From positions 60,760,001 to 60,824,000 of the forward strand of contig OZ260661.1 of the NCBI GenBank assembly GCA_965285935.1: a stretch of DNA of 64,000 bases, in the 5' to 3' direction. The stretch's first letter is position 1. Each line of letters starts with the position of its first letter. The notes beneath the pieces were generated by a model that saw only the letters and a program-made list of their open reading frames with translations, made no database searches and had not been told where the DNA came from. Position numbers and translations under genes: made by a program. Below are positions 18,401 to 36,778 of the stretch, one piece after another. This DNA is from Ophelia neglecta (lineage: Eukaryota).

Positions 18401-21394
18401 CCATCCTGGTCGATCTATCTTTTTAGTCGTCGTAGAATTTTGGAAATAATTAAGATTCCCTTTGTTTACACTTTATCCAACATCGAAATTAGCAAAATCA
18501 GCTGCAAGCGGAAGTCCTGCTGAATGGTAAATCACAGCTGGGTTTTGGACATGATTTATGCGAATAATCAAGATGGTTGACCAGAGTCAAAAACCAATAT
18601 TTGTTCGGGTTTATACCTCAAAAAAAAGGTTGTGTTTCTTCTTCATCCTTAATTTAATTGACACACAAAAACTGTAGTGAAAAAGGCGCTTCCCTGCTGA
18701 ATGAGATTGGTTTGTCGACGGGTCTTCAAGAGGAAAAAAGATGCTGTGTTAGCTTTTGTTCTATTAGAGTGAAGCGAAGGCTTGCCTTTCGAATGATTGA
18801 TGACATGTCATTCTGCGGAGTGTTCATCCAGTGTACCGGACACGAATGAACGCCAGGCAATTTTCAAACATTATTTTATAAACCAAATGACGGGTTACAA
18901 TCATTCGAGGGTTTCCCCCAATGTCCTTTGCTGTACCTTCATCCATCAAGCATGTATATATCAGCTGTTAGAGGGGGAGGCCTCCCGGGGGGGTTTTCAT
19001 TTTACACTTCTCATGCTGCACAGTTTGGCCACTGTGTTTACACTAATTTGTCACTGCAGCAAGACAATAGTGTATTGGTGTCATTATTGAATGAATGTCA
19101 ACTATTAGTCTATAATTACGGACAAGTTTTTAAAACTTTTTTACATTTGATAAATTGCATTGCTCTTGTTTTACCGGTACATTATTTCCTATCAAATTAC
19201 CTTTTAAATAAAATCAATGTTTGTGTTGTTTGGTTCTGATGGCTTCCTCAGGTTCAATTGTCATTGAATGGTTTGGTGGATTGATAAGATTTTAGTATGA
19301 GTCATATGAAACCCTATTGCATTAGTAGCTGTTGCTGATTAATTAGTATTCGTCTTATGGATTTAAACCACTGTAATCAAGACTCACACCTTTATCTGCT
19401 GCTCGTCACATGGGCTGATGATAGCGAGGCTTTCAATCCATGGCAAATTAAAAACGGTTTTAATAGCCGTCCTAATTCTCTGGCTTAGATTAAGACTATT
19501 TAATGTGTCACCGATACCTATGACCGAATCGTAATTTTCATCAGGGATAACTGCCATTAAGGGACAGAAATAGGTCCAGTTCAACTCAGTAATTCGATAT
19601 GCGTTGGCATTATCTTCAGTTTTAGGGGAGCCTAGAAATCCCTCTGCTGCCTTTACACAATAGACTGGGGACTGTGAATGTCGAGTCTTGGCTACATGTA
19701 TTCGATGATAATTCGTGTAATTTCCTGTGAGTTGTGCTATCTGAAAATAGCCGGAGCCGAGAAAATGAGACCTACTCCTTGTTATATTTATCTCCTAGAA
19801 AGCTTAACAGAGCGCCCTCGACAACATTTGGGGGAGTCTGGGAGAGATTTGCCGGGTTTAAATTAAATTTCAGGCGAATTATTCGCAAGACAAGCCATAG
19901 GACGCCGTGATAAATTCGTAATTTCACCTTCCTGTCTGATATCCTAAATGTGGTGAAAGTATTCCTAATTGAGCGAATGAAAACAAAGAGATGAAAGTGA
20001 CTTAGCCTGAATGGGGCTCTCACTTCATCCGCTGATTGCCCAACTCGCAAAAGATAAATCACTCTTTTTTTCCGGTCTTCTCAAGCACGGAGATGAAAAT
20101 AGAGACATTAAATTGAAAGAAACTTTAATGATTGGTTAATCTACCAAGTCATACGTAAAATTGGACATAAAAATTGCATTCCTTCGTTCATTCTGGATTT
20201 GGTGCTCAACGGTTACTTTCTTGGAAATTAATTCTGGTCACTTCAATACCATGCGGCGTGATTTCGCAGTTAGGTCATGTTCGAAATTAACGTGCCTTAG
20301 ACTATCTTTTGTAGATACATCTTGTGTGAAATGCGTTTCTGAACAGATTAATCTGAAAAATGCCAGCAGAGGAAAAGATAACACATGGCTTTTCATTCAA
20401 GGCCTCGCCAAGCAAAACTACGTCCCTACAGAAACGATGTTGGGCCTGATTGTCTGAAGGGTCATAGGGCATAGAAAGCAGGGGTTCATTTCAAGAGAAA
20501 CCAGCGACGTATATTGGAGTCCCACTTAATATTCTGGTCTCGAATCTGACTTGATGTATGGGATATCGATTCAGGAGAGACTCTCGCCCGCCTGTCACGG
20601 TTTGAAAAGCGTTTGAACGCCGGCAGAGCCAAGCAATGGGGGAGATATGTCATCTCTCGTCCTTTTGCGGTTTTATTGCAGTAGCTCAGACCGAAAACAA
20701 TGTCAGGGAAATTGTCACGTCGAGGTCGAAGGCCAGGTTTCTTCGTTTGTACGTCTCATCATGGCCGGAGCTGTGTGACATTTGCGAAAAGATGGCTTAG
20801 GGAGCGAAGGTTTCAAAGGTCATCCAATCACTGGCCTCTAAAGCTGTGTCGTCATAGTGACAAATGGCCGCCATCGAAATGATGTGACAAATACTCGTGT
20901 AAATATTAACTTAGTTTACCCAAGAACCGATACTTCGTCAAAGCTTTTTCCCTTCCAAGATTCCACGATAATTAGCCTCTATACTTTTGCTTATTTTGAT
21001 GGAATGAGAGAGATATCTACATTGTATTCGACGAATTTTGAAGACACCATACACGCATCGCCATAACAAGTAAACTATAGAAGTAGAACACAAGTAAATC
21101 GATGATTACAAAGTAGCATAGTTGATGTTATAGAGAAGACTCCACTTATTAATGTAAAATGGGGAATCTCTCTGTGGCACAAGATCTACTGTGGCATACT
21201 TGAAGCTCACCTTTCCATGCATCCTGACAGAAAATAAACACGTGCAATAACTTAACTCGTTCCAATCATGTACATGTGCGAAACAAAGGTGAAACGGAAA
21301 ACTGTGGATATCTGAAGGTGCTCTTTTCTAGAGACACAAGCGGAGCGAACAAATCGACAATGACATGCAGACGAGTGGCTGGATCAGCAAATCT

Positions 21395-21465
21395 CCACGT
21401 ACACTGTAGAATAGGCTTGTGATTTTCCAAAATGGCACACAAGCTCGGTTCTACAGGGTGCATGG
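21395..21465 (-). ncRNA. mir-10: miR-10-family precursor microRNA (predicted 5p arm CACCCUGUAGAACCGAGCUUGU(G))
   Basis: Minus strand reads CCATG-CACCCTGTAGAACCGAGCTTGTG-TGCCATTTTGGAAAAT-CACAAGCCTATTCTACAGTGTA-CGTGG. About 23 base pairs over 28-nt/27-nt arms with a 16-nt loop. The 5p arm (21460-21438) shares ACCCTGTAGAACCGA with miR-10b-type sequences. Apical UGUG present and CNNC (CAGC) about 17-18 nt past the 3' cut. Same strand as the Hox gene. Exact paralogue not assigned. Confidence 0.9.
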
Positions 21466-22214
21466 CTATTTCACATTCATCATGCCCATGGCGCAGTTAC
21501 CATGCCAACGAGAAGGAGCATCGAATTACCACAGTCGTTCACCAAATTCACTTGTATCATTGACCCAATTTAGGACTCTACTACACACAGTTTCAAAATG
21601 GCATCTACTTACGTTAAATGCAATGGTATTCTGTTAAATTAGTCATAAAGCTAACTTATCGCAGACGATTGGTGAAAACCACTGTAGAAACCAACCAACC
21701 GATAAATGATATCACACGAACCTGCTGCTTCAGGTATTGTCATACCCAGCAAAATTCATATCAGCATTAAACGCATGCAATTCAGTCTAGAAAAAGCGTG
21801 GCAGTCGCTACATGTGTGCCACACTATATAAAGTTCACAGTTGCACACCTACTGTATTAATTAATTATACGTGAATGGGTTGGTTAGACGCTTTCCGGAA
21901 GCGAATTTACCTTTTGGCATATATACCTACCATTTTTGTTCAACTTAGACAATAAACGTATCTTTAAAAAATCATACCTAATGAATGTTTTCCACACGAA
22001 GGCAAAAAACATATAATTGCACTTTTGAAGTGTAGCATAAAGGTGAAAACAAAAAAAAAAGCATAAACGTTGAAATTTTAAAAAATTGAAAATTACACAT
22101 AGTTTGATAAAAAGTAATACAGTGTGTTCCAACGATAAAAATGAAATTGCCATATTATGTCTAATTTCATGAAATATAAATTAAGCTTGCCAATTATTCA
22201 TGGCTAAATATAAC

Positions 22215-22220
22215 TTTATT
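22215..22220 (-). terminator. Candidate distal poly(A) signal of Antp (AATAAA); proximal candidates at 24241-24236 and 24011-24006
   Basis: TTTATT on + within AT-rich, UTR-like sequence downstream of the stop codon. The hexamer alone is weak evidence. Confidence 0.3.
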
Positions 22221-22374: not shown

Positions 22375-22505
22375 NNNNNNNNNNNNNNNNNNNNNNNNNN
22401 NNNNNNNNNNNNNNNNNNNNNNNNNNNNNNNNNNNNNNNNNNNNNNNNNNNNNNNNNNNNNNNNNNNNNNNNNNNNNNNNNNNNNNNNNNNNNNNNNNNN
22501 NNNNN
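22375..22505. other. Assembly gap (131 N)
   Basis: Run of N between the Antp homeobox exon and the miRNA; the true distance across it is uncertain. Confidence 1.
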
Positions 22506-23525: not shown

Positions 23526-23858
23526 ATTTACCCTTTGAAAGATTTACCCTATGTTTTCAATCATATCAATTTACCCTTCAGATAGACTGTACACCAGAAA
23601 AGTGTAACATGTACAATAACATCTACACGTTTGTGCTGCTAATTTTATAAATTTTATAAAGTTTGTTTAAACACGTGAGTATTCATAATAACTTGATTTA
23701 TCGACGGCGTATGTCACCAAGAAATCAATTCTCAACGGTCCAAAGATTTCCTTTCAGAATTTTTCGATGATGGCGAGAGAAAATACAATTTAGAGTTTAC
23801 AATAAGTGTAGTGATATCGTGTGTTTATGCATGTATATGATATAACTACGCTTACTGT

Positions 23859-23911
<53 letters not shown>

Positions 23912-24221
23912 TTCATATTCAATAGAGTTTCTAAAAAATGAAGTGAGACGACTTTGTTTAAAACTTTTGTTGTCGAAAATTTATACCTGAAAAGAACCGC
24001 TTGATTTTATTTTGTTCTATATATTATGATCACTTATCGTGCGTTTTACCTGGAGAAAGTGTAGACGTGTAATAGACATAAGTATACATTAACTAACATT
24101 AAACTACATATTATATATGCCTATAAATAATTTACCCTAACTAGGGAAATACATTATAGAATACGGGCCAAACAAGTGTAGAAATATGTGTAAATTTACC
24201 CATTTGTTTTAATATTTACCC
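23526..24221 (-). promoter_or_regulatory. Cluster of six GGGUAAAU elements in the predicted Antp 3' UTR (candidate miRNA seed sites)
   Basis: ATTTACCC on + at 23526, 23542, 23569, 24130, 24194 and 24214, all in one orientation. The first four extend to ATTTACCCT. Function is inferred. Confidence 0.6.
23861..23908. repeat. (ATACAT)8 microsatellite within the predicted Antp 3' UTR
   Basis: Eight perfect hexamer copies read directly. Confidence 0.95.
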
Positions 24222-24554
24222 CAAAAATATTTGCTTTTATTACCCCTTGCTTGGGATTGGACGACATTGTTGTGACGCAACATTAAAATGACCAATCAGA
24301 TTATATCATGTTGTCATGTGATTTTAAATGGCCCTGACAATGGTGGAAAAAAAGGGCTGCATTTCAGAGTAGAGGATGATTATAATTGCAGCGAAATGTA
24401 GCTTGTAATGCAGAAAAATGCAAAGGTTCACATCAAGATTACTTAAAGTGAATCCATTAAACAGTATTAGACTCCAGACGGGAGTGGCCTATTCCATGAA
24501 TTCTCCAAAGACGGCCAAGAAAAAAAATGACCATTGACCTACTTTCAAACTGTC

Positions 24555-24809
<255 letters not shown>

Positions 24810-36057: not shown

Positions 36058-36778
36058 CGAATTGAGAGCGCATCCAGGGGTAGATGGGAAGGGTTCCTTG
36101 CTTGCCCTCGCCATCTTTCTCAGCGTCGGCTGAGTTACTGTCCTGATCCTCGGACACCTCCCCGTCCACAGAGCTGCTGAACGGCTTCTCCTTCTTGGTC
36201 TCCGTGAATTTCTCCTCGAGGTCCTCACCGAAGGTCGGCTTGGTGGAACTGGAGAGCGGCGTTCCATTGGCGGGGGAAGGACTAGAGAGTGCAGATGGAG
36301 ACGTTTTGTTGTTGTTGTTCTGTTTATTGGAGGAGATGGTGTTGGTAGAGCCCTGGCCAGGGGTGGTATAGTCGGGGCTTCCCGGAGAGGAAGAGATATG
36401 TCCCGAACCGACACTGCTAGAGCTTGACCGAGGACCCCCTGTTTGGGCCCCAGGGCTGCGGTTCGATGAGCTCAGGTTCTGAGGTTCATATTTTGAGTCA
36501 TATTTGGTAGTAGAGGAAGCATATCTGTCTATGTTTTCATAGAATTCAGCAGCGGAGGTTGGCTGCTGGAGTGAAGCGAGAGTACGGATGTTGTCCAATC
36601 TCTCGTAGGGTGGGAAGTTGGGGTACCCGCTCCCCGCGGGGGAGGAGCTACTACCCCCATAGTGGTCCAATCTAGCCCCAGCATGGTAGCCGGCACTCCC
36701 GGGGGTGGCGCCCGAATGATGAGAATAGGCCGCACCACTTTCACTCGTCAAATAGTTTGATGTAAAATACGAACTCAT
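36058..36778 (-). CDS. Antp: Antennapedia/Hox7 homeobox gene, coding exon 1 (N-terminus to hexapeptide)
   Basis: ATG at 36778, with an in-frame TAA upstream at 36805-36803; the ORF-track start at 36787 is TTG. Encodes the MSSYF Hox N-terminal motif, GYPNFPPYERL (resembling the Antp YPRFPPYDR motif) and the YPWMRSQF hexapeptide typical of Antp. Ends at a canonical donor TTC G|GTAAG (phase 1) at 36058/36057. Confidence 0.95.

What the first reader, a model, noticed from the sequence alone, without database searches (positions are those of the whole stretch)
21395..21465. miR-10 paralogue immediately downstream of Antp, not at the canonical Hox4-Hox5 position
Seen: a well-formed hairpin with 5p arm CACCCUGUAGAACCGAGCUUGUG, about 3.1 kb past the Antp stop on the same strand. 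Knowledge: canonical miR-10 (UACCCUGUAGAUCCGAAUUUGU) lies between Hox4/Dfd and Hox5/Scr, and spiralians have extra miR-10-family paralogues. This copy has C in place of the first U and GAGCUU in place of GAAUUU. The 5' end is ambiguous: a basal UG falls at -14/-13 if the cut is at A21459 (seed CCCUGUA, like fly miR-10-5p), otherwise the seed is ACCCUGU. Inference: a cluster-internal duplicate, possibly processed from Antp read-through so that it shares the Antp expression domain. Neither seed matches the Antp UTR sites, so it probably targets other Hox mRNAs.
Basis: partly seen in the sequence, partly recalled or inferred. Interest (0 to 1): 0.8.

Follow-up and report, generated by a model that had tools for sequence, protein, structure and literature searches.

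The report
Known annelid Hox miR-10 paralogue
The hairpin 3.1 kb downstream of Antp is a real, deeply conserved microRNA gene, but annelid Hox clusters are already known to carry such extra miR-10 copies; the one fresh point is that its two DNA strands match two separately named earthworm microRNAs, so it may be read in both directions.

Summary
A 76-nt hairpin lies at window 21392-21467 on the minus strand, 3.1 kb 3' of the Antp stop and between Lox5 and Antp. Canonical miR-10 sits separately between Hox4 and Hox5.

The hairpin is not chance. Both arms are invariant and the loop has diverged at the same place and strand in Capitella teleta, Paralvinella palmiformis and a closer relative from an ENA contig.

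It is not new. Extra Hox-embedded miR-10 paralogues of annelids are described in papers from 2011, 2012, 2018 and 2025. [quoted passage not shown] By that homology the 5' end is C21460 and the seed is ACCCUGU.

[quoted passage not shown] That sequence is unique in this genome, and both strands fold equally well.

My best reading, at about even odds, is a bidirectional locus like fly iab-4/iab-8. No RNA run exists for this organism, so strand use and the Antp read-through idea stay untested. ACAGGGU sites occur 3' of Hox1, Hox3, Scr and Lox5, but not 3' of Antp or the posterior genes.

The parts
21392..21467 (-). pre-miRNA-like hairpin of the MIR-10 family, in the Antp-strand reading
   Evidence: Rfam mir-10 full-length match at 28.9 bits. 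MFE z = -4.4. Orthologues in three other annelid loci.
21439..21460 (-). predicted sense 5p product CACCCUGUAGAACCGAGCUUGU (seed ACCCUGU)
   Evidence: 21 of 22 identical to the Efe-Mir-10-P1f 5p mature from Eisenia small-RNA data. Positions 2-22 are invariant in four annelid loci.
21398..21419 (-). predicted sense 3p (star) arm CAAGCCUAUUCUACAGUGUACG
   Evidence: Same register as the Efe-Mir-10-P1f 3p*. It leaves a 2-nt 3' overhang against C21460 in the fold. Positions 1-21 (window 21419-21399) are invariant; the last base, 21398, is A in Capitella.
21400..21421 (+). predicted antisense 5p product UACACUGUAGAAUAGGCUUGUG (seed ACACUGU)
   Evidence: Exact 22 of 22 match to the Efe-Mir-10-P7 (efe-mir-10e) 5p mature. 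Exact and antisense to Antp in L011, L012 and L013. Unique in the genome.
21440..21462 (+). predicted antisense 3p arm CAAGCUCGGUUCUACAGGGUGCA (carries AAGCUCG, the miR-231/miR-993-type word)
   Evidence: Register inferred from the Efe-Mir-10-P7 3p*. Rfam mir-231 matches the plus strand at 26.4 bits.
21333..21516 (.). conserved non-coding block around the hairpin
   Evidence: 86% identity over 187 nt to the ENA relative, the best non-coding block in 27 kb. Only this block and the homeobox align to Capitella and Paralvinella. The DNA contigs laid on the region show no variant in the block.
24555..24790 (-). Antp exon 2 (homeodomain, tail [16 protein letters not shown], stop 24557-24555)
   Evidence: Translation and splice context. 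Best named matches are Capitella and Paralvinella Antp.
36058..36778 (-). Antp exon 1 coding part, ending in the YPWMRSQF hexapeptide region and a GT donor
   Evidence: 58% identical to the exon-1 product of the ENA relative.
22215..22220 (-). last AATAAA upstream of the hairpin on the Antp strand. The next one downstream of the hairpin is at 20677.
   Evidence: The block 22311-22192 is conserved in the ENA relative.

Best explanation
This is a genuine, ancient annelid microRNA gene of the MIR-10 family, embedded in the Hox cluster between Lox5 and Antp. It is one of the already described annelid duplicates of miR-10.

I commit to the reading that the locus is used on both strands. On the Antp strand, Drosha and Dicer would release CACCCUGUAGAACCGAGCUUGU. 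It has the same ACCCUGU seed as miR-10 and differs from it at positions 1, 12, 17 and 18. It would repress mRNAs carrying ACAGGGU, which here are the more anterior Hox genes. On the opposite strand, a transcript running antisense to Antp would release UACACUGUAGAAUAGGCUUGUG, with seed ACACUGU and a different target set.

Shown here: the hairpin, its synteny, invariance of both arms, identity of each strand's 5p arm to a sequenced Eisenia mature miRNA, and equal folding of both strands.

Inferred: that either strand is expressed in this species, the cut sites (by homology), and the targets.
For: Hairpin and family.

Position: ten collinear minus-strand homeoboxes carry the diagnostic motifs. 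Lox5 has its KLTGP parapeptide at C1:60751k and Antp lies at 60785k.

Orthologues lie on the Antp strand 2.3 to 4.3 kb 3' of the Antp stop in Capitella, Paralvinella and an ENA relative. About 23 to 25 nt of each arm are invariant and the loops differ in sequence and length.

In 27 kb, only the homeobox and the hairpin align to the two distant annelids.

The Eisenia S2 table gives Efe-Mir-10-P1f 5p, which equals the sense arm at 21 of 22, and Efe-Mir-10-P7 5p, which equals the antisense arm at 22 of 22. The antisense 22-mer occurs once in the 762-Mb genome.

By my hand count, the two Eisenia loci show reciprocal decay. P1f keeps the sense arm while its other arm has 3 changes in 22. P7 keeps the antisense arm while its other arm has 9 changes in 23. 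This is what is expected if an ancestral two-strand locus was partitioned after duplication.

Both strands fold equally well or the antisense folds better: -33.2 and -33.2 in the window, -29.0 and -33.7 in Capitella, -32.5 and -40.0 in Paralvinella.

The antisense 5p starts with an invariant U. Position 1 of the sense 5p varies: C here, G in Capitella, U in Eisenia.

Antisense Hox7/Antp transcripts whose 5' ends lie downstream of the Hox7 3' end were cloned in Alitta and Platynereis (bioRxiv 10.1101/2021.01.30.428931).

The miR-993-type paralogue of this cluster is already on the strand opposite to the Hox genes.
Against: There is no small-RNA or RNA-seq evidence for this organism. The three runs that hold the region are DNA contigs.

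Invariance of both arms could also reflect one strand with two functional arms.

The Eisenia loci were not placed relative to their Antp copies, so their orientation is unknown.

The Platynereis paper says Mir-10-P7 and Mir-10-P8 share the seed of Mir-10-P1. That does not fit ACACUGU, so the naming may have changed or my equation with P7 may be incomplete.

Variable basal-stem positions give one site favouring each strand and no compensatory pair.
Confidence: 0.5

Rival explanations
1. Only the plus strand, antisense to Antp, is a miRNA gene. The locus is Mir-10-P7 (efe-mir-10e type), made from an antisense Antp transcript. The ACCCUGUAG arm is conserved only as its 3p partner.
For: The match to the Efe-Mir-10-P7 mature is exact at 22 of 22, and that family is recorded as shared by Capitella and clitellates. 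The sequence is unique in the genome. It has an invariant 5' U. The antisense hairpin is equally or more stable. Rfam mir-231 hits the plus strand. antiHox7 transcripts are known in nereidids.
Against: The sense 5p arm is itself a sequenced mature miRNA in Eisenia. It is invariant over 22 nt in four lineages, which is more than a star arm usually shows. In Efe-P7 that same arm has drifted at 9 of 23 positions, so it is not constrained merely as a partner.
Confidence: 0.22
2. Only the Antp strand is used. The locus is a same-strand miR-10 duplicate, possibly cut out of Antp read-through or a long 3' UTR isoform.
For: The sense arm is 21 of 22 identical to Efe-Mir-10-P1f. It has a slightly better Rfam mir-10 score on the minus strand, 28.9 against 24.4 bits. 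It has the same orientation as Antp in all four loci. No AATAAA lies between 22220 and the hairpin, and the next is at 20677. ACAGGGU sites are enriched 3' of anterior Hox genes: 5 seen against 0.61 expected, P = 4e-4.
Against: It does not explain why the opposite arm matches a second sequenced mature miRNA exactly and is invariant. Position 1 is C or G, which Argonaute loading disfavours (general knowledge). The seed sites are equally explained by canonical miR-10. Read-through is untested.
Confidence: 0.23
3. It is not a functional miRNA, but a decaying duplicate or another conserved element that happens to fold.
For: It falls below the Rfam gathering score. There is no expression data here.
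Against: The conservation has the classic miRNA shape: arms invariant, loop free, flanks decaying. It holds across distant annelids at a fixed syntenic place. Matching mature reads are reported in Eisenia.
Confidence: 0.03

Closest known systems
Canonical miR-10 (MirGeneDB Mir-10-P1), here at G000:C1:60685996-60686064 (-)
   Same: Same hairpin architecture. Same ACCCUGU seed if the cut is at C21460. Embedded in the Hox cluster on the Hox strand. 19 of 23 identical in the 5p arm.
   Different: It lies between Lox5 and Antp instead of Hox4 and Hox5. Positions 1, 12, 17 and 18 differ. The 3p arm is different. The opposite strand carries a conserved second mature-like sequence.
[quoted passage not shown]
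   Same: The 5p mature is identical at 21 of 22 positions and the 3p* at 19 of 22, in the same register.
   Different: That table treats it as an Eisenia-specific duplicate of Mir-10-P1. The synteny found here indicates an older, annelid-wide locus. Its arm opposite the mature has diverged.
[quoted passage not shown] The paper's text describes an annelid-specific mir-10c.
   Same: The mature 5p is identical at 22 of 22 to the plus strand at 21400-21421.
   Different: In Eisenia it is a separate hairpin whose other arm no longer resembles ACCCUGUAGAACCGAGCUUG. In this genome it is the reverse strand of the same hairpin. Equating it with Capitella mir-10c rests on the paper's wording and was not checked against miRBase.
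Drosophila mir-iab-4 / mir-iab-8 (sense/antisense Hox miRNA locus)
   Same: It is a Hox-embedded hairpin that folds on both strands, with a distinct seed from each strand. This rests on my general knowledge of that system.
   Different: It belongs to a different miRNA family and lies elsewhere in the cluster (abd-A/Abd-B). Two-strand expression is demonstrated in flies and only inferred here.
Other Hox-embedded MIR-10 members: miR-993 (Mir-10-P4), miR-1991, and the Capitella mir-10b type (UUACCCUG...)
   Same: Same family, also inside the Hox cluster (PMC3394115, PMC4138081, PMC12257675).
   Different: The miR-993 type lies between Hox3 and Hox4 and is 3p-dominant; here it is a separate locus at C1:60625019-60625096 (+). 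miR-1991 lies between Post2 and Post1. The UUACCCUG type here lies between Lox4 and Lox2, at C1:60893888-60893939.

Membership tests
MIR-10 family (Rfam RF00104 / MirGeneDB MIR-10) | Hairpin of about 60-75 nt with an ACCCUGUAG-type 5p arm that aligns end to end to the family model | tested here: met
   Full-length alignment, model positions 1-74, E = 7e-5. Stable fold.
MIR-10 family (Rfam RF00104 / MirGeneDB MIR-10) | Score at or above Rfam's curated gathering cut-off (47.5 bits) | tested here: inconclusive
   It scores 28.9 bits, below the cut-off. The canonical miR-10 of this genome, whose mature has the standard miR-10 sequence, also scores only 35.0 bits. The cut-off therefore does not separate members here.
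MIR-10 family (Rfam RF00104 / MirGeneDB MIR-10) | Small-RNA reads from both arms with homogeneous 5' ends and 2-nt overhangs (MirGeneDB criteria) | not testable with these tools
   No RNA run holds the region, and the runs that were laid are DNA contigs. Reads are reported for the Eisenia orthologues.
Annelid Hox-cluster Mir-10-P1 duplicates (PMC3049427, PMC6160089, PMC12257675) | Conserved in other annelids at the same Hox-cluster position | tested here: met
   It is found in Capitella, Paralvinella and an ENA relative, on the same strand, 2.3 to 4.3 kb 3' of the Antp stop.
Annelid Hox-cluster Mir-10-P1 duplicates (PMC3049427, PMC6160089, PMC12257675) | Absent from non-annelid spiralians (annelid-specific origin) | tested here: inconclusive
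   No mir-10-like hairpin was found within 10 kb 3' of the Antp-like exon in a gastropod (Candidula) or a bivalve (Tegillarca). Only 10 kb was searched in two species.
Mir-10-P7 / efe-mir-10e type | Mature sequence UACACUGUAGAAUAGGCUUGUG | tested here: met
   Exact match on the plus strand at 21400-21421, in the 5p arm of the plus-strand hairpin, and in three orthologous loci.
miR-993 (Mir-10-P4) | Lies between Hox3 and Hox4, with 3p mature AGAAGCUC... | tested here: not met
   A different locus fits, at C1:60625019-60625096 (+). Its 5p arm equals the Efe-Mir-10-P4a 5p*. The hairpin studied here lies between Lox5 and Antp.
miR-1991 | Lies between Post2 and Post1 (PMC4138081) | tested here: not met
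   The position is Lox5-Antp, and the sequence differs from efe-mir-1991.
Sense/antisense miRNA locus (iab-4/iab-8 type) | Both strands form Drosha-competent hairpins | tested here: met
   The two strands have equal or better MFE in all four species. Consensus folds give 26 and 27 pairs.
Sense/antisense miRNA locus (iab-4/iab-8 type) | Mature small RNAs detected from both strands of one locus | not testable with these tools
   There is only indirect support: each strand's 5p arm equals a sequenced mature from one of two separate Eisenia loci.

The most novel reading that the evidence does not exclude
The Lox5-Antp hairpin is an annelid counterpart of fly iab-4/iab-8. One ancestral locus would yield a miR-10-seed miRNA from the Hox strand and an ACACUGU-seed miRNA (Mir-10-P7) from the opposite strand. 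The antisense product would be cut from the antisense Hox7/Antp transcript cloned in nereidids, which would give that long non-coding RNA a function. In the duplicated earthworm genome, the two strand functions would then have been split between two copies (Efe-Mir-10-P1f and Efe-Mir-10-P7).
Probability: 0.35. Interest if true: 0.6.

Novelty: already known. Interest (0 to 1): 0.3.

Why it matters
That is useful for annotation and not surprising.

Two points may be worth a specialist's time.

- The Eisenia 'species-specific' Mir-10-P1f appears to have an annelid-wide orthologue at a fixed position 3' of Antp.
- Two separately named annelid miRNAs map to the two strands of one hairpin. If both strands are expressed, this would be a second, independent case of a sense/antisense Hox miRNA. 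It would also link to the unexplained antisense Antp transcripts of nereidids and give an example of strand-wise partition after duplication.

All of this can be checked cheaply with existing small-RNA libraries.

Tried and rejected
- **Rfam at gathering thresholds:** nothing in the window. The e-value mode was needed.
- **Expression:** The look-up of sequencing runs returned three runs of one sample, none recorded as RNA. Laying them gave uniform genomic contigs across intron and intergenic DNA, with no joints. There is therefore no evidence for or against read-through.
- **N run at 22375-22505:** it lies inside the putative Antp 3' UTR and was left as it is.
- **Full scan of the Hox cluster for all paralogues:** The posterior half is only half covered. 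miR-1991 and any sixth paralogue were not located.
- **Full-text searches for the mature sequences:** no paper found. The match came from a supplement. No supplement is held for the Platynereis paper, so the current MirGeneDB name (P7 or P8) could not be fixed.
- **Extra Antp-like contigs (L050-L059):** these proved to be arthropod-type by their C-terminal tails and have no hit.
- **L061:** an unrelated genome with a canonical mir-10.
- **The sigma-70 promoter and terminator scan:** irrelevant for an animal genome and ignored.
- **A coding reading of the overlapping ORF 21419-21637 (+), and of the prokaryote-style gene call on L011:** rejected, because conservation is confined to the two arms.
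- **A Markov-shuffle script:** timed out and was replaced by an analytic expectation.

Full report
**1. The observation**

The minus strand of window 21392-21467 forms a clean hairpin.
- The 5p arm CACCCUGUAGAACCGAGCUUGUG is at 21460-21438, a 16-nt loop follows, and the 3p arm CACAAGCCUAUUCUACAGUGUACG is at 21421-21398.
- A 116-nt stretch folds at -40 kcal/mol. The z-score against 200 dinucleotide shuffles is -4.4, and none of the shuffles folds as well.
- Rfam finds nothing in the window at gathering thresholds.
- In e-value mode, mir-10 aligns over its whole length at 28.9 bits, E = 7e-5.
- Failing the cut-off is not informative here. The canonical miR-10 of this same genome scores only 35.0 bits.

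**2. Context**

The window is G000:C1:60760001-60824000.

The upstream gene is Antp.
- Exon 1 codes at about 36778-36058. It ends in YPWMRSQF and a GT donor.
- Exon 2 is 24790-24555, with stop at 24557-24555. It carries an Antp-type homeodomain and the tail [16 protein letters not shown].
- The hairpin starts 3094 nt after the stop.
- My first homeodomain coordinates were off by two codons. One search corrected them, and no result depends on the error.

Ten homeoboxes lie collinearly on the minus strand of C1. By their diagnostic residues they read Hox1, Hox2, Hox3, Hox4, Hox5, Lox5, Antp, Lox4, Lox2 and Post2. Assigning motifs to classes rests on my knowledge of spiralian Hox signatures.
- Hox4 has the KLPNTK motif.
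- Lox5 has the KLTGP parapeptide and lies at 60751k.
- Antp lies at 60785k.
- Lox4 and Lox2 have UbdA-like peptides.

A search of the genome with RF00104 finds the following:

| Locus | Strand | Identity | Position |
|---|---|---|---|
| C1:60685996-60686064 | - | canonical miR-10, UACCCUGUAGAUCCGAAUUUGUG | between Hox4 and Hox5 |
| C1:60625019-60625096 | + | miR-993-type hairpin | between Hox3 and Hox4 |
| window hairpin | - | the finding | between Lox5 and Antp |
| C7 | - | miR-100 and miR-125 | outside the Hox cluster |

A further paralogue, UUACCCUGUAGAACCGAGCGAGUG, lies at C1:60893888-60893939 between Lox4 and Lox2.

**3. Conservation**

I reached relatives' Antp loci through the Antp exons. 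The same hairpin lies on the Antp strand in all three:

| Species or source | Locus and coordinates | Distance 3' of the Antp stop |
|---|---|---|
| ENA-contig relative | L011:13400-13475 | 3080 nt |
| Capitella teleta | L012:18446-18520 | 2316 nt |
| Paralvinella palmiformis | L013:15177-15256 | 4347 nt |

- In the alignment both arms are invariant, over 23 to 25 nt each. The loop differs in sequence and length, and the flanks decay.
- Over 27 kb, only the homeobox and the hairpin align between the window and the two distant annelids. In the closer relative, the hairpin block is the best conserved non-coding block, at 86% over 187 nt.
- A covariance model built from the four sequences finds a single copy in this genome.
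- No mir-10-like hairpin lies within 10 kb 3' of Antp-like exons in a gastropod or a bivalve. This is weak support for an annelid-specific origin.

**4. What is already known**

- Griffiths-Jones et al. 2011 note extra miR-10 and miR-993 duplicates inside the Hox complexes of lophotrochozoans such as Capitella (PMC3049427).
- Heimberg and McGlinn 2012 say the same and list miR-1991 as a further family member (PMC3394115).
- miR-1991 lies between Post2 and Post1 (PMC4138081), so it is not this locus.
- The Eisenia paper lists Hox-linked mir-10, mir-993, mir-10b, mir-10c and mir-1991 (PMC6160089).

The decisive item is the S2 table of the Eisenia paper. The Efe-Mir-10-P1f (efe-mir-10b) mature 5p is UACCCUGUAGAACCGAGCUUGU. 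It differs from the window's minus-strand arm only at nucleotide 1. By homology, the 5' end here is C21460, the seed is ACCCUGU, and the star arm is 21419-21398. That register leaves the expected 2-nt overhang in the fold.

The existence and nature of the hairpin are therefore not new.

**5. The opposite strand**

The same table lists Efe-Mir-10-P7 (efe-mir-10e), recorded as shared by 'Capitella + Clitellata'. Its mature 5p is UACACUGUAGAAUAGGCUUGUG.
- This 22-mer matches the plus strand of the window exactly, at 21400-21421.
- It also matches exactly, antisense to Antp, in all three orthologous loci.
- It occurs once in the 762-Mb genome. Matches with three mismatches are near control level: 7 such matches against 3 in the control.
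- The plus strand folds as well as the minus strand, or better.
- Rfam's mir-231 model hits the plus strand.
- The plus-strand 5p begins with an invariant U. Position 1 of the minus-strand 5p is C, G or U depending on species.

In Eisenia the two matures come from two different hairpins, and their decay is reciprocal by my hand count.
- P1f keeps the ACCCUG arm, while its other arm has 3 changes in 22.
- P7 keeps the ACACUG arm, while its other arm has 9 changes in 23.

Eisenia is reported to have undergone large-scale duplication. The simplest reading is that an ancestral locus with two functional strands was partitioned between the copies.

Independent literature shows antisense Hox7/Antp transcripts in Alitta and Platynereis, with 5' ends downstream of the Hox7 3' end. 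Those transcripts could host the plus-strand hairpin. Whether they include it is unknown.

Two cautions apply.
- Variable basal-stem positions give one site favouring each strand and no compensatory pair.
- The statement that P7 and P8 share the seed of P1 does not fit ACACUGU, so current nomenclature may differ from the 2018 table.

**6. Targets and read-through**

- I scanned the 0.9-2.2 kb following each stop codon. ACAGGGU occurs once 3' of Hox1, Hox3 and Lox5, and twice 3' of Scr. It does not occur 3' of Hox4, Antp, Lox4, Lox2 or Post2.
- That is 5 sites against 0.61 expected, Poisson P = 4e-4.
- This is the familiar pattern of Hox miRNAs aiming at more anterior genes. The sites serve canonical miR-10 equally, so they say nothing specific about this paralogue.
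- Sites for the plus-strand seed are not enriched.
- On the Antp strand, AATAAA or ATTAAA signals lie at 24241, 24213, 24011 and 22220. The next is at 20677, beyond the hairpin.
- A long isoform containing the hairpin is possible. No RNA data exist to test it.

**7. Verdict**

It belongs to an already described set of annelid paralogues, and its mature sequence is on record, so I score the finding as given as already known.

The residual interest is that both strands match known matures. I rate two-strand use at about even odds. The fuller scenario, with an antiHox7 host transcript and strand partition in earthworms, I rate at about one in three.

The scan's earlier notes on this genome touch neighbouring UTR sites, not this hairpin.

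Noticed in passing
G000:C1:60893888-60893939 (L022:9888-9939): A further miR-10-family hairpin lies between Lox4 and Lox2. The minus-strand 5p is UUACCCUGUAGAACCGAGCGAGUG, which resembles the Eisenia Mir-10-P5 type. The plus strand folds more stably (-37.0 against -28.7 kcal/mol), and its 5p reads CACCCUGAGAACUGAG, with a miR-125-like CCCUGAG word.
   Followed up: partly
G000:C1:60625019-60625096 (L002:1501-1578), plus strand: A miR-993-type hairpin lies between Hox3 and Hox4, on the strand opposite to all ten Hox genes. Its 5p arm ACCCUGUAGACCCGGGUUUGUGU is identical to the Efe-Mir-10-P4a 5p*. Its 3p is AGAAGCUCAGAUCUACAGGUAU.
   Followed up: partly
G000:C1:60685996-60686064 (L004): The canonical miR-10 of this genome scores only 35.0 bits against Rfam RF00104, whose gathering score is 47.5. 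A default Rfam annotation would miss every Hox-cluster miR-10 member here.
   Followed up: yes
Regions 3' of the Hox1, Hox3, Scr and Lox5 stops (L048, L046, L044, L040): ACAGGGU seed sites occur only 3' of genes anterior to Antp (5 seen, 0.61 expected), and three of them read ACAGGGUAA. None occurs 3' of Hox4, Antp, Lox4, Lox2 or Post2.
   Followed up: partly
window 23533-24221, minus strand: The six GGGUAAAU words noted by another first-stage note are present, at 24221, 24201, 24137, 23576, 23549 and 23533. They are not complementary to the seed of either strand's products from this hairpin.
   Followed up: partly
L010/L011 (ENA ERZ25069296, contig ctg23096, 92 kb): A record in a metagenome assembly is an animal Hox contig collinear with the window, with non-coding blocks at 70-86% identity. 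Its gene calls are prokaryote-style. The Antp exon-2 product was read through the TGA stop as W (P0002 ends in ...DDKWK).
   Followed up: partly
window 22375-22505: A run of 131 N lies inside the putative Antp 3' UTR.
   Followed up: no
L061:17016-17087 (GCA_977065575.1): An unrelated genome has two homeoboxes 9 kb apart and a canonical mir-10 (67.6 bits) 6.7 kb 3' of the second.
   Followed up: no
G000:C7:13908607-13908678 and 13900784-13900850 (L001, L006): miR-100-type and miR-125-type hairpins lie 8 kb apart on another chromosome. The miR-100 5p reads AACCCGUACAACCGAACUUGUG, two changes from the usual sequence.
   Followed up: no
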